Assembly (NCBI GenBank): GCA_963924565.1
Contig: OZ004610.1
Location: 11,780,001 to 11,844,000, forward strand
From: Ascidiella aspersa
Lineage: Eukaryota
Length of the DNA stretch: 64,000 nt
Reading direction: 5' to 3'
Part shown: one piece after another, positions 47,594 through 64,000 of the stretch
Layout of the letters: each line of letters begins with the position of its first letter
Position numbering within the stretch: position 1 is the stretch's first letter
Notes under the pieces: model-generated
Database searches by the model: none
What the model was told of the DNA's origin: nothing
Seen by the model: only the letters and a program-made list of their open reading frames with translations
Made by a program: the position numbers and the translations under genes

Positions 47594-50482
47594 ATGGACG
47601 TTTTTTGCAAGGCAGCAATTTTTCTGTTTTTTGGCCTCGTTTTGACGGAAGGAAGATTCGTAATTCCGCCGCAGAACTCACTTCGCGACGACGGAGTGGC
47701 AGTGTCACCAATTTCAGGTAAAAATTGTCAGGCCGAATTCGATTATAAAAAGCGTATTCAAGGTTTCTAATTAAAAAAAATCGCACGAATAATTTAACTT
47801 GCGGAAACCGTTTTCACACAAACAAGTTTTTGAGTGCGTTTATAAAGGTGCGTTTTATGTGTATGACTGCGTAGTGCTTTGGTGGTGATTGATGTGGTTC
47901 ACAAGCCAAGATAAGGTTATCGGTACTCGAATATAAATGTCAAAATTAACAAAAAATGCCTTCTGTCTGAAATAATTATTTAATTGCTAGTTAAATTTAC
48001 AGCGTGCGACGAGGTTCTCTCCAAGACGTTAGTTCGCCTTTTGGTATCCGAATACAACAGGATCGGCGCTTCAAATCAGCTCTACGTGCCAGCCGGCGTG
48101 CCAGCCGTCGAATGCAAGGTGGTTATCACTGCTTCTTTTCCATTTGACTTAGCTGTAATGACTGTATTCCGGTAATTTCAAACGTTGTGAGCTGTTTTTC
48201 CCTCATAAATATATTGGGCACAGTGCGGAGGTAAACTACCAAATAAACTTTTGCGGAGGTAAACTACCAAGTAAACCACAATTCAAAATTGGGGACCAGA
48301 GTTTGAAATAATATACTTACCCTAAGGTAGAGCTAACGGTTACAGTGGGCCTAATAGCTTTTCGAAACTTGTCCGGTCGACAGCTTGAAACGCATCAAAA
48401 ATCCGTCCACATGTTGGTAACGTGTATATATATGGTTTGAGTGCAATAAAAAAAAAAAAAATGACAACCTAAATAAACAAAATAACAAGGGCATATTTTA
48501 AATGAGAAATACAAAATTATCTGGACAAAACCTAATGGAGGAAACTGTTGGGCACTGTTGTTTATGGTTGCACTAAATTGTTTTCACTAAACGTAATTTT
48601 AGATGAAATGCCCATAAGTTACACTGACATAAAATTCTCATGCAAGATGCTGTTTATTCTACACCCTGACTAGGATTGGCCCTGACTATAGGTTTAATCA
48701 CTAACAAACGACAAAAATAGTGTTAGCTTAATCGTGGTAAAATTGTTAACTTGTTGATTGGTGGATTTAATTTTCAAAATGGGCGAAAACTATTATAGGC
48801 AGAGGTAAGGCCCTTAAATAATTCAGAAATGACCGAACTCCAACAAATCAGATGAAAAAGAGCCCCTTAAAGCTATTACAAGCAACGCGCCGCGTTTTCC
48901 AAGTTCTTTAAAACAATTGTTGACATTTTATCAAACACGTATGAAAGACATAATGTATTTTAAGCTACACGGTTTCCATATTTATCGCGTTGGAGCGAAT
49001 CCAGGTCACTGCGTCCCAGAAGATATGATCACTTTTTCACGCGTCGATACGGACCTATATAGGCTCCAGCGCACCATTTAATCTATCGGCTATCCAATAA
49101 GCATTCGATTTAAAATCGAGGCGTTGTGTTGGTTTAACACTAAGTTAATAAACATATCTGTCCCGCCCACTATTCCCAAGACGTGGCAACGACAGACAAA
49201 AAATCGATGGAAACATATGTTGAGAACTTAAAAGAAGCAACCAAGTATAACTTAAAGGTCGACAAACCGCATATCGATTTTTCCTAATCATAATAAAGCT
49301 GCCGCAACTAACACCCAGGAGTGGAGTGTGATGGATAATCGTTCGGCATTTAACGCTTGTATTGTCCATTTAGAGCATCGACGGGCAGGAATGTGATCTT
49401 TACGTTGATTTGGCGCCGACATCTTGCAAGAGAAGCACTTCGACATTCTGGTTCGATTGTCAGCCCATCTCGTCACAGGTTAACCTTTTGTCCGTAGTCA
49501 TTTTTGCCCGAACCATTTTGGGGCAAATATGCCATTTCAAAAAGTTTACTTTTTAACCGCCTGTTACAATTTAACACTCGGGCAAAGTCAATGGTCCTTT
49601 TTTTAAATCGTTAAGGACACTCGGCTTAAAGATAAAGAAAGGGTTTAGCCATTATATTGAAGTTTTGTTATCGAGCAGGGCAGCTGAAGTCATTGCGCGT
49701 TTGGTTGATGATTTATCCCATATTTCGGAATTTATCAGTTTCAAATTTGCATAGTATGCGCCAGTCGTCTTGCGTTAAATTTTGTGTGTGATGTTGTCAC
49801 ATCCTGTAATCTTAGTGAATTTCGTGTTTATATTGACCAGGGTTTTGGACCAATCTTCCGTACGTACAGTCATCGTTTGTGTAACGTTTTAAAGTAACGG
49901 GATTCAGGCAACACTAAAATAAACATTATTTTAATATAGTTCTAGTCAAAAGACGAGAAGCCAAATATTGTAGAAACAGTTCAACAAGAAAAATCTCACT
50001 CTGTAAGCCATAAAACACTAGAAATGTTACCGCCAGATAAGCGAAAAGTCTCCTTTAAACGTTTGTTAAACATTGGAATCTTTCAGAATAATACAGAAGC
50101 TGGTCGGAAGACCGTACAACTTAACCCAAAAAACACCTAAAGCAAAACAAGAATTTAACACTTAACATGGCAATGCTCTGATCCCTGGTCAAATAGCATT
50201 ACATCAAAAAACTGTTTGTATAGTGGCATTTTTTACATTCCACAGGGTATAAAGCGCTGCCGGGGAACAGTCAACTTACAAAGTGGTACCGTCGAGGTAC
50301 CGTTGCGTTGTCAAGGCAACAACGGTCCGCTTGGCTTTCCCAATCAAGTGAACAACAACATGCAAATGGGAGGCGCGGATGGATACCCCAATTTCAACGG
50401 GGACGGCTTTTTGGCGGAGGACGGTAGCGAGGTTATGAAGAAGAAGTGGGAAAGCACTTCTGGCAACATCCAGCCGTTTTAA
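47594..50482 (+). CDS. Gene A: secreted cathelin (cathelicidin pro-domain / cystatin-fold) protein, 4 exons, 193 aa
   Basis: Exons 47594-47717, 48003-48118, 49374-49478, 50246-50482. Signal peptide MDVFCKAAIFLFFGLVLTEG; EYNRIGASNQLYV; LAPTSCKRSTSTFWFDCQPISSQ|GIKRCRGTVNLQSGTVEVPLRC. TATATAGA at ~47490 and AATAAA at 50624. Confidence 0.82.
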
Positions 50483-52862
50483 AAACGTTTGGGAACGGTA
50501 CAGGACGACCACTTTGCCACAAATTTTGTTGCTAGTTTTCCTTGCCATTTTGTCGTACTGAGGTATTTTTGTCGGTGTGATTTACGGACCTTTCCCTTTC
50601 GCAAACGATTTTTATTTATTTCCAATAAAGTGATTGAGTGGAAGTAGCAGAAACGACAAGACCCAATTATCAATATAGCCTAAGGCTATGGTAAACCTAA
50701 CAGAAATAAAGAATAGGTGAAAAATTAGGGTAAGGACACATCAGACAACTGGACTGTTCAAAGGCTGCCTATTTTTCAAACTATAAAACAGTTCCCAGAA
50801 AGAGGGTTTAAAAATACAAAAGGTCATAAAAACTCTCAACAGAGGTTGGAAGCATTGCACGTTTAAAACTTAAACAGCTACATTTTAAAAGTTTACGCAT
50901 AATTACCCTGTTTATATATCAGGTCACTATAGCTAAAAAAATTATGTTAACCAGCCAGGTGTCGGACAATCACGATCAAGGATAGTCTGGAATAGCTCAG
51001 TAAGTAGACAATGCGTCGTGTGTCAAATCGAATAAACTGGCCTTGTATACCGCCAGATCGTGCAATAAATGTATATCTTGGGCGTGTTGTACATCGCGAA
51101 GGCGGACTGCTTACATGTCGCGTACACAGAACATGTGTTTCGCGAAAACAAAGATGCATGATTGTCTAACAATAAACTTTGGAGCATAATGGTTGGAGGT
51201 TGTAGTAAGACGTAATAAGAATATCAAAGCCCATACAGAAGTAGGTATCATTTTGGACGTTTCGAATAACTCTTTATTCATTTTCAACATGAAAAAAGCG
51301 CCCTTTTGCCAAACTGTGGACCCAACACAGGCAAACGGCGTATACATAAATGTCAATTGGATAATTAAAAGCGTCTCTGCCAAGTTCCCAGGGTTTAAGA
51401 GGCCTTTTTCTTTCGATCCAAACTTTGCAATATTGTCGATCCGGACAAAGGTTCTATGGGCGATAGCACTCTTTTTAAGTTACTGATTCAGTTGCACATT
51501 TTACATCATTTTTGCAGACAGATAACGCGAAAAATTTAAATGCAAGTATATATTCAGCTACAAATCACGTATTTTAAATTTCAGAAGAGGTTTATTATCC
51601 AGCGGGTTTGGTATACACATTTTCTCGTTTCACTGCAAACCTGTCACAAACCACTTTTAACTAACACACAGTCATCCCTTTCAAGTAAAGATCATTAATA
51701 GTTTTCAACTCATGGAAAGGTCATACGCGCTGCGAACTATCGTCGATTTTATGAAGTGCAACGTTCGACTCCTAGCATCAAACCCACCACTGTAATGCTT
51801 TTTTGATGTGTTCATTTTTCTTATTATACCGGTATACTGCCATAAAGATATTTCATTTTTTTGTGTCTTTTTACTTTGCGTCTTGTTGGCCATGTGTGTC
51901 ATTCCCTGATAAAGGCTTTCTGAATAGTTAGCCGAAACGTTGGATAAACAAATATATACCAGAAGAACTTATTTTTAGTATATCCAAGCAAGACGCGATA
52001 CCAGCTAAAATAGCCAGGTATCCTCGCAAGGGCTTCTCAATCAGAAAAAACGGTTTACTCTGCCGAACGTGACAGGAAACATCAGCCGGCTTCGGTCTGG
52101 AAAAGGCCGACTTGGCTACAGCATCGGGAAGGTTGACCGCAGTACCTCGCCTCGTTATCTACCGACAGCTGAGCAAAATCGGGCTTCAGAATGCCGCACT
52201 AGTTATTCGTTGAGGCAGACTTTCGTCGGGAGTTTGTAGAGAGTGCCTTCCATGAACACTGAACAGTTATCGTTCGGCATCTCTCAGGAAATGTTGGTAA
52301 AAAGGACAGTGGCAAAATAACTTGTATGTGAAGCTTAATACACCGCTTAGATTAAAAGGTTTAAATTGATAATTGTATGTCTGGTAAGTTCAGAAATTAC
52401 AGTGCACAGGCTTGGAAAATCAATAGATATCGCCTTAACACAAATTAAGCAGGCGACTAAAGACAAAAATGAACCTAAAAATTAAATAAATCCTATATCT
52501 TGCGAAACTGTTACTTTTATCCGAAATTACAAATTAAACTCGATTATCGTGATTGTAAAATTGCAAACTTCATGATATTTTTGGTACGGACAAAAGGAAA
52601 CAAGTAGCGTTTTCAAACTGCGACTAGAGGTTTCGCTAATTTACGTTTCAAAGTAGTCGAGGCATTGCTCTTTTCCGAATAGGGCCCAATGACTGAAATA
52701 GGAATTGACTCCTTCCGCCAATCAAAGCAGCGAGCAAAACGGTGACGGCGCGACTCTTGCGCAAGGTGGCTGCCATTCGAAAGTGTCGCAAATCTCGCTA
52801 CCTTTTTGTCGCAGGTTCCTGTAGTTTGTGGACGCATTTAGACTGTGCAAAACACGTCAAGG

Positions 52863-55800
52863 ATGGCCTCGGCTGCGCTGTGTCTAAGTTCGATCGTCTT
52901 ACTGGCGATTGTCGCCACGGAAGGCAACCACCACGATGGAAGGTAAGGTGTAAGTCGGTCTATTGTTTGGCATGGGTAGAACGAATAAGGGTATTGTTGG
53001 CAATGTTTTTCAAACGTTAGTTGAAATGGGTTCAACCGGCTACAATCGGACTACATAAATCGTTCGTTATGTGTTGTAATTCGATAAATAAGATTTTAAA
53101 GGCATTCCATAAAAATATTTTTTTTTATTAGTGTCGAAAATTGACAAAACTATTTAGTAATACCGTTAACAGGTGGTCCATCGCGCTGAAACCACTTTGT
53201 TAAACACGATTGCAATGTTTTCTTTAAAATTACTTCTCCACGAAAAACAAAATCATGTAAATGGACGTAAACTTATATTTCTTTATTCCTACTCCGCGAT
53301 ATTTAAAATTGGGCAAATTTCAAACATCTCTCGAGTAGCTAATTTACTTGACTCTCAGGGATAATAACATTGTAGGCCCATGTAGGGGTATTTGGGCTCA
53401 AAAAAAAACAATGAAAGCTTTCTCCAGCCATGTTCGCAGAAATTGAATCTGCCGATTACTCGTGGTAAAACTTACAGGAGAAAATGATTGACGAGCCCCA
53501 GAAAGCTTTGCGGGCAAAAGACGATTAACGTCTGAAGCCATGGGCAAATTTTCACGGAAACCAAATCAACACGATCTTCTCCCAACGTTTTTAGTCGGAC
53601 TTTTCGTGTTTCGCTCAATACACGGCCGAGCTTTGTCGCTTGCACCGACGTAAATTTTCGAGTTTTGTCAGGCTTTTTTCGGGAGTATGGTATGCGATTG
53701 TAACAACAACTATGAACATCCAGTTGGGACCAGCAAAAAACAACAAAAAAGAAATTCAGATAATTAACTGCGAAATGCATTAATATTTATACACACAAGA
53801 AGCGTACTTTTCCCGCAGCTACCCGACGTACCTTCTGCCAGGAGTGAAAAGAAGCTACCGGCGCCAATACCAGCCTTCGTATCGCCTTCCTGTGAGATCG
53901 CCCTACGGCCGCGTTCAGCGTCATTACCGACCCAGTTCAAGGCCGAAGTACTACTACATTCCACGGCGAACCGTTCAATACAGAAGCAGGCGAATCCCGC
54001 AGCCCAGTAACTCGACGTGGAGCGATCCATACGTTCTGCCTCACGAACGCGTCTCCAGACCAAGGTGTATATCCTCACAAAAGTGTTTAATCTATGAAAT
54101 TTTAAGGGACCGTCAAGGTTTTGTAAAATATAGACAAGTCCGTGACAACAGCAGAGATTTAGAAGTTGGTACTCCTCAAGATTAAATGGTTGAGGTTACT
54201 CAAAATTTATTTTGCGGTCCTTTAAATTTTCTTAGAGGTCACCAAAGACAAACCTTCAAAACACTCTGCTCACAATTATAAGATGCAAATAATTTCAGTT
54301 GACATGGACGCGAAAACTAAGCTTATTACTCTCCTTTGGGAATTTATGTGAGAAGACAGTTAGCTTTTTTGGAATGCTTGTTTAATTCTCACGTATGACG
54401 AGGATAAAGTAAACAAATTTATTTTAGTAAAATTGTGCTCCATCTAACTAAATGCGAAAATATCTTGCGTTGCCATGTTAGCGACACGCAGCAAGAAATA
54501 AATACAGCCAAATCCCTGTGAACCTTACAACAGTTAACTCAAGTAATGTAAACGTTATTCACATATTCACGCGGAGTTTCCAAAAAAAACATCAGAGGCT
54601 AAAGTGTCCGCGGCAATATTTCCAAATCACATTTTGGCAGCAATATTTCGCAACACTAACCACGCCAAAACTAACGAGTGCGTGTCTTTAACAGCAGAGT
54701 AGCGGCAGTGGTGGCGACGAACCCTGACACTGCGGCGTACACACTTCCACGCGATACTCCAGCCTTGCTGCTTCCCAACGTGCAACCGGCGAAGAGCTTT
54801 TCTCCACTGTTAAATGGACACATGAGGATCCCGTATCGCCGACCAGTGGTGGACATGGGGTAATAAACTAGCGCAGTGGCGCCCTGGTGTGCCATTTCTA
54901 AAGCTCAATGGTGTCGATAGGTAGTTAGGAATGTGATATTTGCTCAGTTGGTAAGCTTTTTGGTGCAACAATTTGTGTGCGATTAGAGACAGTTATATAT
55001 AAACCTTTTTTTGATGCCCTAATATTATCCGACATTTTGATTTAGTGATGCAACTTGGGCGAAAGAAACAATCCTTAAAAATAGATTGTACTAATTTTTT
55101 AACTTGAATCTGAACAACGTTGCTTTCGTTTGATGTAGTTCGATGCCGGGTGCGGCTGGCATGCGTGTTGCGTCATCGCGCGCAAAGGTCTGCCCTTGGA
55201 ACATGATTCCTGCAAAATCGACTTCCAGCAAAGTACTGGAAGAAGCTTTGCAAATCTCGCAGACGAACGTCTCGTTCGTATTGAAGAACATCAAAGAATC
55301 GATGGTGAGACTGTTTGTCCAAGTCTATTTTTTTCTTAGAAAAATTGTCATATAGTTGTAAGCTTTCCTAGGACAATTCTATTAAAGCCTGTACTTCTAT
55401 TTGAAGCTGAGAAAGTGCCGCCGGTGCACCAGCTTGGGATGCACTCCAGCTTGGCAAGTGGCCATCATGCGCATCACCCTGGCGAGGGCGGACGGCTGTG
55501 ATTGGATGGACAAGTGCGAGTGTCAGCCAATCGAAAACGTGAGCTGGCGCAGTTGTTTGCATTTGAAATGTAACAGAACTAGGAAGGATTAGCAGGGGCG
55601 TCCACAGGTGCATTTCGTGTTCGGCGGTTATGTAAACCGGCGTTTGATGTACATTTTGAGCAGCGAAGGTAAATTTGCTGCGACCGAACGACATCGGTCC
55701 CACGACAAACATACGCTTCAGACAGTGGTCTAAAGTCCAATCGTCTAGTTATGATTTCAATGTGAAAAGTACTAAAGGAGGTAATTGTACTGGTTTGCCG

Positions 55801-57239
55801 CGTTGGGGAATCTTTGCTGCCGGATAAACCAACTATATAAAAATTTAGTATTTTCCAGGAATACTTTCAAATAGAGTTGTAAGTAGAATCGAAGTATAAA
55901 CCATCGGAAACTTTTAAACTTCGTCTAAGCATGGCAGTACCTTCTGTAATGTTTTCATTTTAACATACTATTGCTTCAGGGTTTAAAATACTTTTGCTTA
56001 AAGGTTTATGCTTTTGCTTCAAGAGTTATACCCCGCTTATGTCTTATTACGGTATACCTAATTTTGTTGTTGCACAGGACTGGGAAATTGAATGCAATGT
56101 GGAAGGAACGATCTTGCATAACACGATCTCCGTGACCAACTTCACGATAACGTGCGAGGAAACCAACAAGCCTGAGGTGAGACGCGAAGTGAAAAAGGAG
56201 TTGATCGACTAGCGTTCGCCATGAGTCATAAACCACCAAATGATTTAGCATACCTCGGCATTTGCAATGGAGGTGTCGAAGTGACGCGCCGCAAATATTT
56301 GATAACGAGCCGTCAGTCAATGAAGGGCTAAAGCAGTGGTTCTCAACCTTCGTGCCATTTCTAATGCCCAAGGGTGCCGATAAGTAATTGAGAACCTTCA
56401 AGAATCTGATTTTTGCTAAACTCGTTTATTGTGATATTCTTGTGATTTACCTACGGAAAAATCTTGTAGGGGTGCCGCAATCTATTTATTATTTCTGGGG
56501 GCTAAAGCAGTGCTTCTTAAAACATTTTTAGTTTTGTTCACCACTAGCATTTATCTCCAGATTTCATTCATCCTTGTCTCATGATATGATAAAACTATTT
56601 TGTCTATATATAACAGCACAAAATGAACACCCAGAATATCTGCCCTGCTGGCAAGCTATCACCCATTTTCTCACCCTTAGTCACCCCTGCAAAAATTGTA
56701 TTCATCCCAGGTTGAACCATTCACCTGATTAAGAAACACTGGGCTTAAGGACAAAGCGTTTTTCAGCAGTAGCAATGGTAAAATCAATTAGAGATAATTA
56801 ATTACACATTTTCTAATGCCTTATTTCACAGGGATTTGACCCGTGGGCCAAAGAGGGAGGTAAACATGTCCACCACCATCATCCGGATACAACAACGCCC
56901 GAGACCACCTTGGTTACCGATGAAGAGCAAACTGAGATGGAGGAAGAAGAAGAAGAAGAGGCTCCGGAACAAGGAGCATCCACCGAAGTCGTTACGACAG
57001 AGGCGCCGGAAGTGCCAGCGGAGCCACAGGATCCCGAAAAACCGAAGGATCGGATAAACGGCGATGAGGAGGAAGTGGGAAGCGGATCGGACGTCGGGAT
57101 TATCCTGATTCCTCCCATCATAGAGATCGCACCTCCAGGTCGCGGGGACTTTAACGGCAAGGAGCCGGAGCCGGATGATGCTCCACCACCGGCTCCTCTT
57201 CTCAACGACCTGAAGCAGGATGACCTCATTCGCTTTTAG
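52863..57239 (+). CDS. Gene B copy 1: secreted 431-aa protein with an Arg/Tyr/Pro-rich segment, a divergent cathelin/cystatin-like Cys domain and an acidic RGD-containing tail; 7 exons
   Basis: Exons 52863-52942, 53819-54064, 54695-54859, 55139-55304, 55407-55538, 56078-56176, 56832-57239 (1296 nt, phases 2,2,2,0,0,0). Signal peptide MASAALCLSSIVLLAIVATEG; AATAAA at 57385. Confidence 0.8.
56334..56741. mobile_element. Two adjacent hAT-type MITEs (truncated 56334-56499; complete 56508-56741), duplicated in unit 2 from ~63645
   Basis: The first starts CAGTGGTTCTCAACC. The second has TIR CAGTGCTTCTTAA / TTAAGAAACACTG. The 8-mer GGCT(A/T)AAG occurs before, between and after them. Confidence 0.75.
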
Positions 57240-57872
57240 ATCAAGGAGTCCCCTATTGGAAATCATTATAATCGCCAAAACTTTTTGGTCCGCAGTTCCC
57301 GGGCGTTCCTATCACCGCCCATGTGTTTTTTTCGCTGCTGGATGTTGCTTTATTTGCTTTTAATCCACATCGCTGTTAAATTAAAATAAAATCGCTGCTT
57401 TTCGCGCTAAAAGTCACGCACGCCGTTGTACAAAACTTAATTTTTGTTTAACAACATAACATAATAACTTTGGAAAAGTTTTTAGTTTTTAAATGTATTT
57501 TATCTAAAATTTTGAATGGTATTACTTCAGATTTTAAGAGGATCCAAAACATTAAAGAAGGCAGAAAAAAAAACTTTCGTAATACTGCGCGTACTGAAAG
57601 AACCAACCAGAAAAACTTGCCAGACGAAGTCACGCCACCGTCTCAATCACTATATGGCGCATAGCAATTTTCAACGATCGTATGACAAGAAACGCGAGCG
57701 CGAAAGCACGTCACTCGGCACGCAAGCGATGGAAATACGCAAGAATTTTACGGGAATTAGCGGGGCTTAAACATTTTTCTAACCGTCCGCAGACCAGAGC
57801 TATGCCAGGTATGCGTCGCGGCCCCGTGCGACGCGAGCGAAATATTTCCCTCATTCGGGTCGGAGATTGGTC

Positions 57873-57973
57873 ATGGCGAGGTGCGGAGGATTTTTCGGGC
57901 TGTTTTCGACAGTTGCTCTCTTGCTGCACGCCGCCGCTTCTGTTCAAGTCGGCGGAAATGCGATCGAAATATG
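57873..57973 (+). CDS. Orphan first exon (signal peptide) of a third secreted gene, cut off by the duplication junction
   Basis: ATG, then MARCGGFFGLFSTVALLLHAAASVQVGGNAIEI, then TG|GTGAGG (phase-2 donor). It is preceded by a CpG-rich stretch (57660-57870), and unit 2 begins ~110 bp into the intron. Confidence 0.6.
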
Positions 57974-60144
57974 GTGAGGCTTAGTAGAATGACCCGGACG
58001 TTATTTAGGGCTGACAGCTTCGAAAGTGATTTTTTAGTTTTCTCTTTAGGAAACTCTCGGTGTACAGGGTGATTTCATGTGTTCGTGCAATACATGTATA
58101 TCTTGGGCGTGTTGTACATCGCGAAGGCGGACTGCTTACATGTCGCGTACACAGAACATGTGTTTCGCGAAAAAAAAGATGCATGATTGTCTAGCTTTAG
58201 CGTTTGCAGTTGGCCGCCTAGAACAGTTATATCCAACCGAAAAAACACGATTCAATAGCGATAAATTTACCATATATAACAACAAGCTAATAAACTATAC
58301 TACTCTGAAGTCATTTTAATGCTATATAAAAGGGTGTAACTTTGTGGAATCAGAAACCATAGCAGGTTTTTGCTTTTCAGTCAATGTTCCACTGACGCGA
58401 TATCACCCAAAGGAGGAATATATATATTCGCTTAAACCAGTGATTCTCAAATAAGTGTGCCGGGGGATGTTTTTTAATACACGATTGCAAATTTACTTGT
58501 AAAGGGTTAGGGGCATCGGTAAGGTGAAAGGGTTTGCCACATGCCTTCTCTCTGTGAGGAAACAAGATAAAGACAGCGCCCTTTTGCCAAACTGTGAACC
58601 CAACAAGGTAAACGGCGTATACATAAATGTCAATTGGATAATTAAAAGCGTCTCTGCCAAGTTCCCAGGGTTTAAGTGGCCTTTTTCTCTCGATCCAAAT
58701 TTTGCAATATTGTCGATCCGGACAAGGGTTCTATGGGCGATAGCACTCTTTTTAAGTTACTGATTCAGTTGAACATTTTACATCATTTTTGCAGACAGAT
58801 AACGCGAAAAATTTGAATGCAAGTATATATTCAGGTACAAATCACGTATTTTAAATTTCAGACGAGGTTTATTATCCAGCGGGTTTGGTATACACATTTT
58901 CTCGTTTCACTGCAAACCTGTCAACAATCCACTTTTAACTAACACACAGTCATCCCTTTCAAGTAAAGATCATTAATAGTTTTCAACTCATGGCAAGGTC
59001 ATACGCGCTGCGAACTATCGTCGATTTTATGAAGTGCAACGTTCGACTCCTAGCATCCAACTCACCACTGTAATGCTTTTTTGATGTGTTCATTTTTCTT
59101 ATTATACTGATATACTGCCATAAAGATATTTCATTTTTTTTGTGTCTTTTTACTTTGCGTCTTGTTGGCCATGTGTGTCATTCCCTGATAAAAGGCTTTC
59201 TGAATAGTTAGCCGAAACGTTAGATAAACAAATATATACCAGAAGAACTTATTTTTAGTATATCCCAGCAAGACGCGATACCAGCTAAAATAGCCAGGTA
59301 TCCTCGCAAGGGCTTCTCAATCAGAAAAAACGGTTTACTCTGCCGAACGTGACAGGAAACATCAGCCGGCTTCGGCCTGGAAAAGGCCGACTTGGCTACA
59401 GCATCGGGAAGGTTGACCGCAGTACCTCGCCTCGTTATCTACCGACAGCTGAGCAAAATCGGGCTTCAGAATGCCGCACTAGTTATTCGTTGAGGCAGAC
59501 TTTCGTCGGGAGTTTGTAGAGAGTGCCTTCCATGAACACTGAACAGTTATCGTTCGGCAGCTCTCAGGAAATGTTGGTAAAAAGGACAGTGGCAAAATAA
59601 CTTGTATGTGAAGCTTAATACACCGCTTAGATTACAAAGGTTTAAATTGATAATTGTATGTCTGGTAAGTTCAGAAATTACAGTGCACAGGCTTGGAAAA
59701 TCAATAGATATCGCCTTAACACAAATTAAGCAGGCGACTAAAGACAAAAATGAACCTAAAAATTAAATAAATCCTATATCTTGCGAAACTGTTACTTTTA
59801 TCCGAAATTACAAATTAAACTCGATTATTGTGATTGTAAAATTGCAAACTTCATGATATTTTTGGTACGGACAAAAGGAAACAAGTAGCGTTTTCAAACT
59901 GCGAGTAGAGGTTTCGCTAATTTACGTTCTCAAGTAGTCGAGGAATTGCTCTTTTCCGAATAGGGCCCAATCAGACTGAAATAGGAATTGACTCCTTCCG
60001 CCAATCAAAGCAGCGAGCAAAACGGTGACGGCGCGACTCTTGCGCAAGGTGGCTGCCGTTCGAAGGTGTCGCACATCTCGCTACCTTTTTGTCGCAGGTT
60101 CCTTTAGTTTGTGGACGCATTTAGACTGTGCAAAAACGTCAAGG

Positions 60145-63100
60145 ATGGCCTCGGCTGCGCTGTGTCTAAGTTCGATCGTCTTACTGGCGATTGTCGCCAC
60201 GGAAGGCAACCACCACGATCGAAGGTAAGGTGTAAGTCGGTCTATTGTTCGGCATGGGTAGAACGAATAAGGGTATTGTTGGCAATGTTTTTCAAACGTT
60301 AGTTGAAATAGGTTCAACCGGCTACAATCGGACTACATAAATCGTTCGTTATGTGTTGTAATTCGATAAATAAGATTTTAAAGGCATTCCATGAAAATAT
60401 TTTTTTTTATTAGTGTCGAAAATTGACAAAACTATTTAGTAATAACGTTAACAGGTGGTCCATCGCGCTGAAACCCCTTTGTTATCACGATTGCAAAGTT
60501 TTCTTTAAAATTACTTCTCCACGAAAAACGAAACCATGTGAATGGACGTAAACTTATATTTCTTTTCTTATTCCTACTCCGCGATATTTAAAATTGGGCA
60601 AATTTCAAACATCTCTCGAGTAGCTAATTTACCTGACTCTCAGGGATAATAACATTGTAGGCCCATGTAGCGGTATTTGGGCTCAAAAAGAAACAATGAA
60701 AGCTTTCTCCAGCCATGTTCGCAGAAATTAAATCTGCCAATTACTCGTGGTAAAACTTGCAGGAGAAAATGATTGACGAGCCCCAGAAAGCTTTGCGGGC
60801 AAAAGACGATTAACGTCTGAAGCCATGGGCAAATTTTCACGGAAACCAAATCAACACGATCATCTCCCAACGTTTTTAGTCGGACTTTTCGTGTTTCGCT
60901 CAATACACGGCCGAGCTTTGTCGCTTGCACCGACGTAAATTTTCGAGTTTTGTCAGGCTTTTTTCGGGAGTATGGTATGCGATTGTAACAACAACTATGA
61001 ACATCCAGTTGGGACCAGCAAAAAACAACAAAAAAGAAATTCAGATAATTAGCTGCGAAATGCATTAATATTTATACACACAAGGAGCGTACTTTTCCCG
61101 CAGCTACCCGGCGTACCTTCTGCCAGGAGTAGAAAGAAGCTACCGGCGCCAATACCAGCCTTCGTATCGCCTTCCTGTGAGATCGCCCTACGGCCGTCTT
61201 CAGGGTCATTACCGACCCAGTTCAAGGCCGAAGTACTACTACATTCCACGGCGAACCGTTCAATACAGAAGCAGGCGAATCCCGCAGCCCAGTAACTCGG
61301 TGTGGAGCGATGCATACGTTCTGCATCACGAACGCGTCTCCAGACCAAGGTGTATATCCTCACAAAAGTGTTTAATCTATGAAATTTTAAGGGACCGTCC
61401 AGGTTTTGTAAAATATAGCCTAAGTCCGTGACAACAGCAGAGATTTAGAAGTTGGTACTCCTCAAGATTAAATGGTTGAGATTACTCAAAATTTATTTTG
61501 CGGTCCTTTAAATTTTCTTAGAGGTCACCAAAGACAAACCTTCAAAACACTCTGCTCACAATTATAAGATGCAAAGAATTTCAGTTGACATGGACGCGAA
61601 AACTAAGCTTTTTATTACTCTCCTTTGGGAATTTATGTGAGAAGACAGTTAGCTTTTTTGGAATGCTTGTTTAATTCTCACGTATGACGAGGATAAAGTA
61701 AACAAATTTATTTTAGTAAAATTGTGCTCCATCTAACTAAATGCGAAAATATCTTGCGTTGCCATGTTAGCGACACGCAGCAAGAAATAAATACAGCCAA
61801 ATCCCTGTGAACCTTACAACAGTTACCTCAAGTAATGTAAACGTTATTCACATATTCACGCGGAGTTTTAAAAAAAAACATCAGAGGCTAAAGTGTCCGC
61901 GGCAATATTTCCAAGTCACATTTTGGCAGCAATATTTCGCAACACTAACCACGCCAAAACTAACGAGTGCGTGTCTTTAACAGCAGAGTAGCGGCAGTGG
62001 TGGCGACGAACTCTGACACTGCGGCGTACACACTTCCACGCGATACTCCAGCCTTGCTGCTTCCCAACGTGCAACCGGCGAAGAGCTTTTCTCCACTGTT
62101 GAATGGACACATGAGGATCCCGTATCGCCAACCAGTCGTGGACATGGGGTAATAAACTAGCGCAGTGGTTCTCAACCGGGTTGCCGCGGCGCCCTGGTGT
62201 GCCATTTCTAAAGCTCAAGGGTGTCGATAGGTAGTTAGGAATGTGATATTTGCTCAGTTGGTAAGCTTTTTGGTGCAACAATTTGTGTGCGATTAGAGAC
62301 AGTTATATATAAACCTTTTTTTGATGCCCTAATATTATCCGACATTTTGATTTAGTGATGCAACTTGGGCGAAAGAAACAATCCTTAAAAATAGATTGTA
62401 CTAATTTTTTAAGTTGAATCTGAACAACGTTGCTTTCGTTTGATGTAGTTCGATGCCGGGTGCGGCTGGCATGCGTGTTGCGTCATCGCGCGCAAAGGTC
62501 TGCCCGTGGAACATGATTCCTGCAAAATCGACTTCCAGCAAAGTACTGGAAGAAGCTTTGCAAATCTCGCAGACGAACGTCTCGTTCGTATTGAAGAACA
62601 TCAAAGAATCGATGGTGAGACTGTTTGTCCAAGTCTATTTTTTTCTTAGAAAAATTGTCATATAGTTGTAAGCTTGCCTAGGACAATTCTATTAAAGCCT
62701 GTACTTCTATTTGAAGCTGAGAAAGTGCCGCTGGTGCACCAGCTTGGGATGCACTCCAGCTTGGCAAGTGGCCATCATGCGCATCACCCTGGCGAGGGCG
62801 GACGGCTGTGATTGGATGGACAAGTGCGAGTGTCAGCCAATCGAAAACGTGAGCTGGCGCAGTTGTTTGCATTTGAAATGTAACAGAACTAGGAAGGATT
62901 AGCAGGGGCGTCCACAGGTGCATTTCGTGTTCGGCGGTTATGTAAACCGGCGATTAACATCAGATAACGAAAGTCAGGGGTAAATTTGCTGCGACCGAAC
63001 GACATCGGTCCCACGACAAACATACGCTTCAGACAGTGGTCTAAAGTCCAATCGTCTAGTTATGATTTCAATGTGAAAAGTACTAAAGGAGGTAATTGTA

Positions 63101-63487
63101 CTGGTTTGCCGCGTTGGGGAATCTTTGCTGCCGGATAAACCAACTATATAAAAATTTAGTATTTTCCAGGAATACTTTCAAATAGAGTTGTAAGTAGAAT
63201 CGAAGTATAAACCATCGGAAACTTTTAAACTTCGTCTAAGCATGGCAGTACCTTCTGTAATGTTTTCATTTTAACATACTATTGCTTCAGGGTTTAAAAT
63301 ACTTTTGCTTAAAGGTTTATGCTTTTGCTTCAAGAGTTATACGCCGCTTATGTCTTATTACGGTATTCCTAATTTTGTTGTTGCACAGGACTGGGAAATT
63401 GAATGCAATGTGGAAGGAACGATCTTGCATAACACGACCTCCGTGACCAACTTCATGATAACGTGCGAGGAAACCAACAAGCCTGAG
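60145..63487 (+). CDS. Gene B copy 2, exons 1-6 (last exon expected just beyond the window)
   Basis: Exons 60145-60224, 61104-61349, 61984-62148, 62449-62614, 62717-62848, 63389-63487. Same lengths and splice sites as copy 1, with the frame open. Confidence 0.8.
62163..62250 (+). mobile_element. hAT MITE left-end fragment (same family as 56334); counterpart at ~54874 has a 21-bp deletion
   Basis: CAGTGGTTCTCAACCGGGTTGCCGCGGCGCCCTGGTGTGCCATTTCTAAAGCTCAAGGGTGTCGATAGGTA; copy 1 reads CAGTGGCGCCCTGG. Confidence 0.65.
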
Positions 63488-64000
63488 GTGAGACGCGAAG
63501 TGAAAAAGGAGTTGATCGACTAGCGTTCGCCATGAGTCATAAACCACCAAATGATTTAGCATACCTCGGCATTTGCAATAGAGGTGTCGAAGTGACGCGC
63601 CGCAAATATTTGATAACGAGCCGTCAGTCAATGAAGGGCTAAAGCAGTGGTTCTCAACCTTCGTGCCATTTCTAATGCCCAAGGGTGCCGATAAGTAATT
63701 GAGAACCTTCAAGAATCTGATTTTTGCTAAACTCGTTTATTGTGATATTCTTGTGATTTACCTACGGAAAAATCTTGTAGGGGTGCCGCAATCTATTTAT
63801 TATTTCTGGGGGCTAAAGCAGTGCTTCTTAAAACATTTTTAGTTTTGTTCACCACTAGCATTTATCTCCAGATTTCATTCATCCTTGTCTCATGATATGA
63901 TAAAACTATTTTGTCTATATATAACAGCACAAAATGAACACCCGGAATATCTGCTCTGCTTGCAAGCTATCACCCATTTTCTCACCCTTAGTCACCCCTG

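What the first reader, a model, noticed from the sequence alone, without database searches (positions are those of the whole stretch)
52863..57239. Gene B: an 'inverted cathelicidin' with cationic N-terminal cargo, cathelin-like core and acidic tail
Seen: the core aligns with gene A by motif and exon structure (ITLARADGCDWMDKCECQPIEN| vs VDLAPTSC..FDCQPISSQ|, then a phase-0 exon with a C-x19-C pair), and both signal peptides end in TEG. Exon 2 has 16 Arg, 12 Tyr, 13 Pro and only 2 acidic residues in 82 aa, while exon 7 is strongly acidic. Established: Pro/Arg-rich peptides (PR-39, Bac5, Bac7) are cathelicidin cargoes, but they sit C-terminal to cathelin. Inference: a paralogue with the cationic peptide in front and an acidic tail that could neutralise it until cleavage. 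Alternatively it is a self-assembling matrix or adhesive protein whose Tyr residues become DOPA.
Basis: partly seen in the sequence, partly recalled or inferred. Interest (0 to 1): 0.78.

Follow-up and report, generated by a model that had tools for sequence, protein, structure and literature searches.

The report
Sea-squirt cystatin-fold protein with charged arms
A real, transcribed and recently duplicated sea-squirt gene makes a secreted protein whose folded middle probably has the cystatin shape (the scaffold of vertebrate cathelicidin and chemerin), flanked by a strongly basic arm and a strongly acidic tail; its job is still untested.

Summary
Gene B (52863-57239, + strand) is a seven-exon gene. 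Spliced RNA-seq reads confirm all six introns, including both sides of the Arg/Tyr/Pro-rich exon 2.

It sits in a head-to-tail 7-kb tandem duplication with an intact twin, B'. A core-only paralogue lies just past the window.

Its only database relative is the uncharacterised Ciona intestinalis protein LOC494354. That protein has the same layout: signal peptide, basic Tyr/Arg/Pro arm, nine-cysteine core and polyacidic tail.

Two independent predicted models of the Ciona core match cystatins and chemerin best, and cathelin domains less well. The models are low-confidence. The two introns inside B's core are phase 0, as in the vertebrate cystatin/cathelicidin/chemerin genes.

No sequence search links it to cathelicidin, cystatin or neighbouring gene A. 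The inhibitor motifs are absent.

So a cystatin-fold core is supported, membership of the cathelicidins is not, and "cationic cargo masked by an acidic tail" stays an untested inference. It is a new variant of a known kind.

The parts
52814..52862 (+). 5' untranslated leader; probable transcript start near 52814
   Evidence: 20 RNA molecules end at 52814, and read depth begins in the bin 52700-52856 (tables 2 and 6).
52863..52942 (+). Exon 1: start codon and signal peptide (MASAALCLSSIVLLAIVATEG), followed by NHHDG
   Evidence: Sequence read. The donor is confirmed by 133 spliced reads. That it is a signal peptide is judged by eye; no predictor was run.
53819..54064 (+). Exon 2: basic Tyr/Arg/Pro-rich arm (16 R, 12 Y, 13 P; net +16); contains one RSRR site
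   Evidence: Composition. Spliced on both sides, by 133 and 68 reads. It is the fastest-changing exon between B and B', with 7 non-synonymous and 2 synonymous differences.
54695..54859 (+). Exon 3: second part of the N-terminal arm (Pro-rich, net +3)
   Evidence: RNA joints 54064>54695 (68 reads) and 54859>55139 (41 reads). Composition.
55139..55304 (+). Exon 4: end of the arm, first core cysteine (VCPWN) and the predicted helix of the cystatin-like core
   Evidence: Gene C has an exon-4-like piece at 40% identity. The helix is placed by analogy with helix 95-109 of the Ciona model. That placement is by eye, because BLASTP of this exon against P0001 gave no significant alignment. The exon ends in phase 0.
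55407..55538 (+). Exon 5: six-cysteine centre of the core (Cys-rich loop, strand, CDWMDKCEC)
   Evidence: 46.5% identical to Ciona P0001 residues 126-168, with all six Cys kept. It was the basis of the only database hit. It has phase-0 introns on both sides.
56078..56176 (+). Exon 6: last two strands of the core, closed by C-x19-C; conserved NFT glycosylation sequon
   Evidence: C-x19-C and NFT are shared with Ciona. Gene C keeps DWE..C-x19-C.
56832..57239 (+). Exon 7: His run, polyacidic tail (net -28), conserved near-terminal motif (EE.GSG..DV, then a hydrophobic stretch), then a 35-residue species-specific extension with RGD; stop codon
   Evidence: The tail and end motif align with Ciona, which stops before the RGD part. 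The acceptor is confirmed by 51 spliced reads.
51058..58080 (.). Unit 1 of a head-to-tail tandem duplication that carries gene B
   Evidence: blastn of the two units gives 97-98% identity, and unit 2 begins at 58083. Nine repeat families lie 7277-7311 nt apart.
60145..64000 (+). Gene B', the twin copy in duplication unit 2. All seven exons are intact; exon 7 runs past the window end to 64560 in window-style numbering
   Evidence: Exons match at 95.9-99.4% without gaps. There are 16 non-synonymous and 8 synonymous codon differences. The RNA reads mostly carry B'-type letters.

Best explanation
Gene B is a genuine, transcribed ascidian gene. It is the orthologue, as one of two tandem co-orthologues, of Ciona intestinalis LOC494354, and it encodes a secreted 431-residue protein in three parts.

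1. **Basic arm.** About 140 residues rich in Tyr, Arg and Pro, probably disordered.
2. **Core.** About 110 residues with nine cysteines, adopting a cystatin-type fold but lacking the protease-binding motifs. It most likely descends from the cystatin superfamily.
3. **Acidic tail.** About 135 residues, probably disordered, with a conserved motif near its end.

Most likely mechanism (inferred, not shown): it works like the vertebrate cystatin-fold pro-proteins cathelicidin, chemerin and kininogen. The folded core would serve as a carrier for a charged segment, and the acidic tail would pair electrostatically with the basic arm. That pairing would keep the arm masked or condensed during storage in secretory cells, possibly blood cells. 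Release, a change of salt or pH, or proteolysis would then free the arm to bind microbes or matrix.

It is not a cathelicidin by any sequence criterion, and its charged segments lie the other way round.
For: **Shown**
- Gene model and transcription, with six of six introns spanned by spliced reads.
- An intact twin copy in a tandem duplication.
- Reciprocal best match with Ciona LOC494354. It was the single hit among 1.84 billion representative proteins (E 1.2e-4), and the Ciona protein finds only B and B' in this genome (E 6.9e-7 and 9.4e-6).
- The same three-part layout in Ciona, with all nine core cysteines, the C-x19-C pair, an NFT sequon and the end motif conserved. The arm keeps its composition (12 R, 8 Y and 7 P in 62 residues) but not its sequence.

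**Fold of the Ciona orthologue**
- The ESM Atlas's own model, residues 91-200, matches clusters of chemerin (TM 0.69 and 0.66), fetuin-B, cathelicidin PF11, kininogen and cystatin-like 1.
- My AlphaFold2 model has one helix and four strands at residues 95-195.
- Foldseek rank 1 is chemerin (E 0.013, probability 1.00), followed by CRES, cystatin C and fetuin-B.
- In the Foldseek-independent scan of 48,161 chains, the top 8 are all cystatin-family inhibitors, led by CRES (Z 9.3, rmsd 3.1 A over 93 residues).
- In the second look, cystatin C scores Z 10.0 (rmsd 2.4 A over 91), chemerin Z 9.4 and protegrin cathelin Z 7.5.

**Gene structure.** The core is cut by exactly two introns, both phase 0. 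Wittamer et al. 2003 state that intron number and location are strictly conserved among the chemerin, cathelicidin, cystatin and kininogen genes and that these introns lie between codons (passages read).

**Charge layout.** +16 and +3 in exons 2 and 3, against -28 in exon 7.

**Precedent.** Anionic propieces that neutralise cationic peptides are reviewed in PMC10608444 (passages read).

**Evolutionary pattern.** There is a recent duplication, an excess of amino-acid changes in the arm (7 to 2), length variation and a transcribed frame-broken allele. These are the kind of turnover seen in effector genes, but the numbers are small.

**Tissue.** The Ciona cDNA is named cihA10P13. I recall this clone prefix as that of a haemocyte cDNA library. 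That is recall only and was not verified.
Against: - No Foldseek match reaches E 0.001. Z values of 9-10 are only a little above the 7-8 that the tool says unmatched models typically reach.
- **The models are of the Ciona orthologue.** B itself was not folded, because that would need the exons joined.
- **No sequence-level link to any cystatin-superfamily family.** Pfam gave nothing for 7 of 7 B exons and nothing significant for P0001. The PDB sequence and profile searches were empty.
- **Competing automatic label.** UniProt calls one Ciona entry a CTCK (cystine-knot) domain protein.
- **Nothing shows cleavage, storage, masking or activity.**
- **Processing sites are not conserved.** The KR site is absent from B' and from 163 of 163 RNA reads. 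RSRR is absent from Ciona.
- **Composition.** By my recollection, a Tyr-rich arm is not typical of known Pro/Arg-rich antimicrobial peptides.
- **Tissue of expression in this species is unknown**, because the sample names are coded.
Confidence: 0.4

Rival explanations
1. Structural or adhesive condensate protein. The block of positive Tyr/Arg/Pro sequence and the block of negative Glu/Asp sequence would drive self-coacervation. The Tyr residues (possibly oxidised to DOPA) and the odd ninth cysteine would cross-link the material into tunic, clot or glue. The RGD would offer a cell-attachment site.
For: Charges are strongly segregated: +19 over exons 2-3 against -28 in exon 7. There are 12 Tyr in 81 residues. 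The arm's composition is conserved in Ciona while its sequence is not, as expected for a material-forming disordered region. The core has nine cysteines, an odd number, in both species. RGD is present in B and B'. About 156 reads per million were laid on the gene (1217 of 7,793,684 records), which suggests an abundant message.
Against: RGD is missing in Ciona. There is no repeat structure of the kind I recall as usual in adhesive or matrix proteins (none seen on reading). A folded cystatin-type core has no obvious role in a material. No tissue, DOPA or cross-link data exist.
Confidence: 0.22
2. Granule-matrix or ion-buffering protein of secretory cells, granin-like. The polyacidic tail would bind Ca2+ or metals (the His run helps in this species) and aggregate cargo in dense granules. 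The basic arm would be incidental or yield minor peptides.
For: The polyGlu tail is the most striking conserved feature: 57 Glu in 126 residues in Ciona, and 37 Asp plus Glu in 135 here. HVHHHH follows the core in B. An acidic motif around GSG is conserved, and I recall that it resembles a glycosaminoglycan attachment context.
Against: The His run is not in Ciona and varies in length within the species (25 of 57 reads lack 3 nt). This reading does not explain the conserved basic arm or the cystatin-type core. No localisation data exist.
Confidence: 0.13
3. Chemerin-like signalling protein. A cystatin-fold ligand would be activated by trimming of a terminal segment and read by a receptor on blood cells.
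For: Chemerin is the first structural match in two independent searches: Atlas rows 1 and 5 with TM 0.69 and 0.66, and Foldseek rank 1. It scores Z 9.4 with rmsd 2.7 A over 94 residues. Chemerin is made as a precursor activated by C-terminal cleavage (abstract and passages).
Against: There is no sequence similarity to chemerin in any search. The ranking among cystatin-fold proteins on a low-confidence model is not reliable, and cystatin C and D score higher. 135-140-residue charged arms are unlike chemerin. No paper links chemerin to tunicates in the listing (two incidental co-mentions only).
Confidence: 0.08
4. Working cysteine-protease inhibitor: an ordinary type-2 cystatin with decorated ends.
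For: The best structural matches are inhibitory cystatins: cystatins C, D, F and E/M, and the Ascaris and tick cystatins. The C-x19-C spacing of the last disulfide is, by my recollection, that of cystatin C.
Against: The hairpin loop where cystatins carry QxVxG is replaced by a Cys-rich loop: KCRRCTSLGC here and YCRRCGPRGC in Ciona. No Pro-Trp lies between the last two strands. There is no Pfam PF00031 match.
Confidence: 0.05
5. Cystine-knot (CTCK-type) signalling or dimerising domain, as the automatic UniProt name of one Ciona entry suggests. The cystatin-like prediction would then be an artefact of shallow alignments.
For: UniRef names Q69HT3 a 'CTCK domain-containing protein'. The core has a C-x-C motif and nine cysteines, an odd number that could form an intermolecular bond. 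The model confidence is low.
Against: Two different predictors give a helix plus a four-stranded sheet. No cystine-knot protein appears among the 50 rows shown in any of three structure searches. There is no Pfam cystine-knot hit even at E up to 10.
Confidence: 0.04

Closest known systems
Ciona intestinalis uncharacterized protein LOC494354 (NP_001137141.1; AAP91698.1 'hypothetical protein cihA10P13')
   Same: Reciprocal best match. It has the same order of parts: signal peptide, basic Tyr/Arg/Pro arm starting YP[ST]Y..P, nine-Cys core, polyacidic tail and the end motif EE.GSG..DV plus a hydrophobic stretch. Exon 5 is 46.5% identical.
   Different: 325 residues against 431. The arm is shorter (62 residues) and not alignable beyond its first residues. 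The tail is almost pure Glu. It has no His run, no RSRR, and no RGD-bearing extension. It has no described function, and I found no paper naming it.
Type-2 cystatins (cystatin C, D, E/M, F, CRES)
   Same: The predicted fold of the orthologue's core: cystatin C scores Z 10.0 with rmsd 2.4 A over 91 residues, and CRES scores Z 9.3. Both are secreted. The last two strands are tied by a C-x19-C pair. The domain is split by two phase-0 introns.
   Different: There is no sequence match. The QxVxG and PW inhibitor loops are missing. It has nine cysteines instead of four, and long charged arms on both sides.
Chemerin (RARRES2)
   Same: It is the top structural neighbour in the Atlas and Foldseek searches. 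It is a non-inhibitory cystatin-fold protein made as a precursor and has more than four cysteines.
   Different: No sequence similarity was detected. Chemerin is about 140 residues with a short C-terminal activation segment, not 135-140-residue charged arms.
Cathelicidins (cathelin-like domain plus C-terminal cationic peptide)
   Same: A cystatin-type scaffold joined to a strongly cationic segment in a secreted precursor. Phase-0 introns lie within the scaffold. Cathelin domains are among the structural matches: 1pfp Z 7.5, 1n5h Z 7.1 and 4eyc Z 6.4.
   Different: There is no PF00666 match. The cationic segment is N-terminal and about 140 residues long, and the C-terminus is acidic. The gene has seven exons, where I recall four for cathelicidins. 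The cysteine spacing differs, at C-x5-C-x-C-x10-C-x19-C. Cathelin domains match less well than cystatins do.
Anionic propieces of cationic host-defence peptides (for example sea-urchin centrocins and strongylocins)
   Same: The principle that an acidic segment in the same precursor neutralises a cationic one until processing (PMC10608444, passage read).
   Different: Those propieces are 15-30 residues long and adjoin a short peptide. Here both charged blocks are about 135-140 residues long and are separated by a folded domain. No processing is shown.

Membership tests
Cathelicidins (Pfam PF00666) | Sequence match to the cathelin-like domain profile | tested here: not met
   Pfam gave 0 families for 7 of 7 exon translations at E up to 10. 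There was no PF00666 hit for Ciona P0001 or P0002. The PDB profile search gave 0 hits.
Cathelicidins (Pfam PF00666) | Cystatin-type fold of the pro-domain | tested here: inconclusive
   The orthologue's models are cystatin-like, but their confidence is low (pLDDT 52-75). Cathelin domains match at Z 7.5, 7.1 and 6.4, below cystatins at Z 10.0. B itself was not folded, because the joined step was left out.
Cathelicidins (Pfam PF00666) | Cationic antimicrobial peptide at the C-terminus, encoded by the last exon and released by proteolysis | tested here: not met
   The last exon is acidic (net -28), and the cationic part is N-terminal, in exons 2-3. Release and activity cannot be tested with these tools.
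Cathelicidins (Pfam PF00666) | Four cysteines in two local disulfides with the family's spacing (spacing recalled, not taken from a call) | tested here: not met
   B reads C-x5-C-x-C-x10-C-x19-C in exons 5-6, plus four more cysteines upstream.
Cystatin superfamily (fold and gene structure) | Helix packed on an antiparallel sheet | tested here: met
   This holds for the Ciona orthologue only and at low confidence. The AF2 model has helix 95-109 and four strands at 115-195. The Atlas model independently matches cystatin-fold clusters. The top 8 of 48,161 chains are cystatin-family inhibitors.
Cystatin superfamily (fold and gene structure) | Domain interrupted by two introns lying between codons at conserved places | tested here: met
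   The exon 4/5 and 5/6 junctions are both phase 0. The rule for the vertebrate genes comes from Wittamer 2003. The places agree only approximately: the first lies at the first hairpin, and the second about 5 residues before the C-x19-C pair. I judged this from alignment ranges and from my recollection of the cystatin C gene.
Inhibitory type-2 cystatins (Pfam PF00031) | QxVxG hairpin loop, PW loop and conserved N-terminal Gly | tested here: not met
   The first hairpin carries KCRRCTSLGC, or YCRRCGPRGC in Ciona. No PW lies between the last strands. There is no PF00031 hit.
Chemerin (RARRES2) | Sequence similarity and a short C-terminal activation segment | tested here: not met
   The resemblance is structural only. 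No sequence hit was found. The C-terminus is a 135-residue acidic tail.
CTCK / cystine-knot domain (automatic UniProt name of Q69HT3) | Knotted three-disulfide ring, all-beta fingers, profile match | tested here: not met
   There is no Pfam knot family at E up to 10. The models contain a long helix. No knot protein appears in the rows shown. The PROSITE profile itself could not be run here.
LOC494354 family (ascidian) | Reciprocal best match and shared domain order | tested here: met
   reciprocal match; layout, nine Cys, NFT, end motif.

The most novel reading that the evidence does not exclude
Tunicates have their own derived, non-inhibitory branch of the cystatin superfamily that works as a host-defence pro-protein. 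A cystatin/chemerin-type scaffold would carry a long cationic Tyr/Arg/Pro effector arm at its N-terminus and a built-in polyacidic neutraliser at its C-terminus. The 'cystatin scaffold plus charged effector' design behind cathelicidins, chemerin and kininogen would then predate, or have arisen in parallel to, the vertebrate radiation, and in a mirror-image arrangement. Gene A next door would be a second, more cathelin-like branch of the same local cluster.
Probability: 0.15. Interest if true: 0.8.

Novelty: new variant of a known kind. Interest (0 to 1): 0.55.

Why it matters
[quoted passage not shown] They place the first diversification into non-inhibitory families, such as cathelicidin and the kininogen progenitor, in the vertebrate ancestor.

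A conserved ascidian protein with a cystatin-type but non-inhibitory core and two oppositely charged arms would be an independent or earlier diversification in the sister group of the vertebrates.

It also gives the uncharacterised Ciona gene LOC494354 a testable structural and functional hypothesis. The charge-segregated design is a compact natural case for studying self-masking or condensation of secreted proteins.

If the basic arm proves active, it would be a new class of tunicate defence or adhesive peptide.

Tried and rejected
**Sequence searches**
- Pfam, exon by exon, on B, on gene A and on the Ciona proteins: nothing significant.
- PDB sequence search with P0001 and with profile A6: nothing.
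- ESM Atlas search by features with the Ciona core and with exon 2: no usable hit.

**Paralogues and relatives**
- Own-genome searches with exons 2, 4, 5, 6 and 7 found only B, B' and, for exons 4 and 5, gene C. They never found gene A.
- tblastn of each B exon against about 25 kb downstream found no arm, tail or signal exon for gene C. A crude signal-peptide and acidic-ORF scan also found none.
- A against B by BLASTP and hhalign: too weak to call paralogy.
- The search for homologous proteins with P0001 residues 24-200 found 2 proteins among 74 candidates, both Ciona LOC494354.

**Structure**
- A second AlphaFold2 run on residues 24-200 gave the same topology at lower confidence (mean pLDDT 40). 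I did not use it for fold searches.
- Two alignments with exon rows (A3 and A4) misplaced the exon-4 and exon-6 rows. I did not use them for folding.

**Identity with a known Ciona protein**
- Identity with the tunicate-specific tunic protein Epi-1 is rejected: Epi-1 is a trefoil-domain protein (passages read).
- The haemocyte peptide CiEMa comes from a different gene (passages read).

**Literature**
- No paper holds LOC494354, cihA10P13, NP_001137141, Q69HT3, AAP91698 or XP_009858902.
- No listed paper treats an ascidian cathelicidin (listing only).
- No listed paper treats a tunicate chemerin (listing only).
- A search for the clone prefix 'cihA' returned only unrelated author names.
Tables of Ciona haemocyte or metamorphosis omics papers could mention this gene and I could not see them.

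**Not done**
- The exons were never joined.

Full report
**Observation**

The stretch 52863-57239 holds an open gene on the + strand. By reading the sequence and checking splice sites and phases, I obtained seven exons. A public RNA-seq run of the same species (X4, raw reads) then tested the model directly.

- Six of six introns are spanned by spliced reads: 133, 68, 41, 61, 34 and 51 reads, all GT..AG and all in one orientation.
- Coverage falls to about zero in the introns, and 20 molecules end at 52814, about 49 nt before the ATG.
- The reads moved one boundary. Exon 3 begins at 54695, one codon earlier than my first choice.
- Final exons: 52863-52942, 53819-54064, 54695-54859, 55139-55304, 55407-55538, 56078-56176 and 56832-57239. 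The total is 1296 nt, or 431 residues.
The quoted peptide strings and the C-x19-C pair are also exact.
- Reads were accepted from 95% identity, so they include those of the twin copy described next.

**Surroundings**

Gene B lies in unit 1 (51058-58080) of a head-to-tail tandem duplication. Unit 2 starts at 58083 and carries an intact twin, B'.

- B' runs from 60145 to 64560 in window-style numbering, so its last exon lies just beyond the window.
- The twins differ at 25 exonic bases, giving 16 non-synonymous and 8 synonymous codon changes. Seven of the non-synonymous and two of the synonymous changes are in exon 2. Introns are 97-99% identical.
- Of the 15 exonic sites that one search lists, 14 differ from the window's B in run X4, and at all 14 the reads carry the B' letter. 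Ten are fixed and four are mixed.
- Either B' is the main expressed copy, or the RNA animal's copies differ from the assembled ones. Two transcript types are present in either case.
- 19 of 80 reads lack 2 nt in a CG run of exon 4, which breaks the frame. 25 of 57 reads lack one His codon.
- A third, divergent paralogue, gene C, lies about 3 kb beyond the window. It has only exon-4-, 5- and 6-like pieces: 40% and 38% identity for the first two, and DWE..C-x19-C for the third.
- Own-genome searches with five B exons never found gene A.

**Relatives elsewhere**

A profile of exon 5 (B, B', C) was scanned against 1.84 billion representative proteins. It gave a single hit, P0001 (E 1.2e-4).

- P0001 is Ciona intestinalis 'uncharacterized protein LOC494354 precursor'. 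Cluster mates include 'hypothetical protein cihA10P13' and an automatic UniProt name, 'CTCK domain-containing protein'.
- The Ciona protein's only matches in this genome are B and B', so they are reciprocal best matches.
- The layout is the same in Ciona: signal peptide, basic Tyr/Arg/Pro arm (12 R, 8 Y and 7 P in 62 residues), nine-cysteine core, polyGlu tail (57 Glu in 126 residues) and a shared motif near the end.
- Exon 5 is 46.5% identical with all cysteines kept. Exon 6 shares C-x19-C and an NFT sequon.
- The arms share only composition and their first residues, YPTYLLP here against YPSYVVP in Ciona.
- The RGD, the His run and the RSRR site of B are not in Ciona.

**Fold**

The evidence comes from the Ciona orthologue.

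- The ESM Atlas holds its own model of P0001. Residues 91-200 of that model match clusters of chemerin (TM 0.69 and 0.66), fetuin-B, cathelicidin PF11, kininogen, cystatin-like 1 and the cathepsin F cystatin domain.
- My AlphaFold2 model used alignment A5, in which exon rows are kept separate. It gives helix 95-109 and strands 115-127, 140-152, 172-181 and 187-195, at pLDDT 52-75. Both arms fall below 50.
- Foldseek ranks chemerin first (E 0.013, probability 1.00), then CRES, cystatin C and fetuin-B. Nothing reaches E 0.001.
- In the Foldseek-independent scan of 48,161 chains, the top 8 are all cystatin-family inhibitors: CRES (Z 9.3, rmsd 3.1 A over 93), Ascaris cystatin (8.7), chicken cystatin (8.6), cystatin F (8.5), cystatin E/M (8.1), a tick cystatin (7.7), SQAPI (7.1) and a second tick cystatin (7.0).
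- The second look gives cystatin C Z 10.0 (rmsd 2.4 A over 91), cystatin D 9.9, chemerin 9.4, protegrin cathelin 7.5 and 7.1, and human cathelin 6.4.
- A second AF2 run on residues 24-200 kept the topology at lower confidence.
- No cystine-knot protein appears in any list, so the automatic CTCK name is not supported.

I rate a cystatin-type fold as likely, at about 0.75. A specifically cathelin-like fold is not shown.

**Gene structure**

The core is encoded by three exons separated by two phase-0 introns.

- Wittamer et al. 2003 (passages read) state that intron number and location are strictly conserved among the prochemerin, cathelicidin, cystatin and kininogen genes, and that these introns lie between codons.
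- Mapped through the structural alignment ranges (Ciona 95-197 onto cystatin C 20-120), B's introns fall at the first hairpin and a few residues before the C-x19-C pair.
- As I recall the cystatin C gene, that is where its two introns lie. The recalled positions were not checked here.
- This agreement favours common descent from a cystatin over convergence.

**What it is not**

- There is no Pfam, PDB-sequence or profile match to cystatin, cathelicidin or Spp24.
- The loop that carries QxVxG in inhibitors is a Cys-rich loop here, and there is no PW loop. A working papain-type inhibitor is therefore unlikely.
- The cationic part is N-terminal and the last exon is acidic, the reverse of a cathelicidin.
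- Kinship with gene A is not demonstrable: 7 of 18 residues in one exon, hhalign probability 3%, and nothing in the other exon pairs.
- Adjacency, strand and the two phase-0 introns keep A-B kinship possible.

**Mechanism**

The shown facts are these: the protein has a signal peptide and so is probably secreted, the block charges are +19 in exons 2-3 and -28 in exon 7, a folded core lies between them, the design is conserved across two ascidians, and turnover is recent and rapid. Everything else is inferred.

- The acidic tail pairs with the basic arm, within one molecule or between molecules, during storage.
- Release or proteolysis then frees the arm.
- The family's vertebrate relatives habitually work as processed precursors, and anionic neutralising propieces are a known device.
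- Against a defined cargo: the Lys-Arg that would bracket a 47-residue peptide is Glu-Arg in B' and in 163 of 163 RNA reads, and RSRR is not conserved in Ciona.
- The material or coacervate reading and a granin-like reading explain the same features nearly as well.
- My odds are: pro-protein or host defence 0.40, material 0.22, granule matrix 0.13, chemerin-like signal 0.08, inhibitor 0.05 and cystine knot 0.04, with the rest unknown.

**Novelty**

- Kordis and Turk 2009 (passages read) list only cystatins and stefins in urochordates and treat the non-inhibitory families as vertebrate inventions.
- I found no paper naming the Ciona gene or its accessions. I found none on ascidian cathelicidins (listing) or on tunicate chemerin (listing).
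- Supplements were closed and may hold mentions.
- The scan had already noted gene A on this same window (s1-801613) and exon 2 (s1-802452). It had not noted the Ciona orthologue or the fold.

**Limits**

- The models are low-confidence and are of the orthologue.
- The tissue of expression in this species is unknown, because the sample names are coded.
- The haemocyte origin of the Ciona clone is recalled and not verified (paper not held).
- Whether both copies exist in all animals is open.

Noticed in passing
window 51058-58080 and 58083-64000 (continuing to about 65475 in window-style numbering; L006): A perfect head-to-tail tandem duplication of about 7.0-7.4 kb, at 97-98% identity, that carries the whole gene. 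B' has 80 extra nt just after the stop region, at the place of 57250. RNA reads and contigs of other animals carry that B'-type insert.
   Followed up: partly
window 55177 (exon 4) and 56870 (exon 7): 19 of 80 RNA reads lack 2 nt in a CG run, which would break the reading frame before the core. 25 of 57 reads lack 3 nt in the His run. A broken allele or copy is therefore transcribed in the RNA animal, and the His run varies in length.
   Followed up: partly
L006 7086-7230, 7870-8001 and 8260-8373 (G000:C4:11847086-11848373, about 3 kb past the window end): Gene C is a divergent paralogue with only the three core exons: CPWN plus helix, the Cys-rich exon with CDW..KC.C, and DWE..C-x19-C. It has the same exon length (132 nt) and phases for the middle exon. 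No signal peptide, basic arm or acidic tail was found nearby, and its expression was not checked.
   Followed up: partly
window 54860-55050 (intron 3) and 56310-56780 (intron 6): Pieces of a very high-copy repeat that share a GTGCCATTTCTAA-type core. Summed contig depth reaches about 1e5 in runs X1 and X2, against about 100-200 for the flanks.
   Followed up: no
window 50246-50479 (gene A, last exon) and 48005-48118: By my recollection, gene A's last exon starts with a Lys-Arg-Cys..Gly-Thr-Val stretch and a C-x16-C pair that look much like the end of the vertebrate cathelin domain. Its second exon looks like the cathelin helix. Pfam finds nothing in any of its 4 exons. On motifs, A looks more cathelin-like than B does.
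   Followed up: partly
window 53847 (exon 2, codon 10): The Lys of the Val-Lys-Arg-Ser dibasic site exists only in the assembled B copy. B' and 163 of 163 RNA reads encode Glu, so this candidate convertase site is not fixed in the species.
   Followed up: yes
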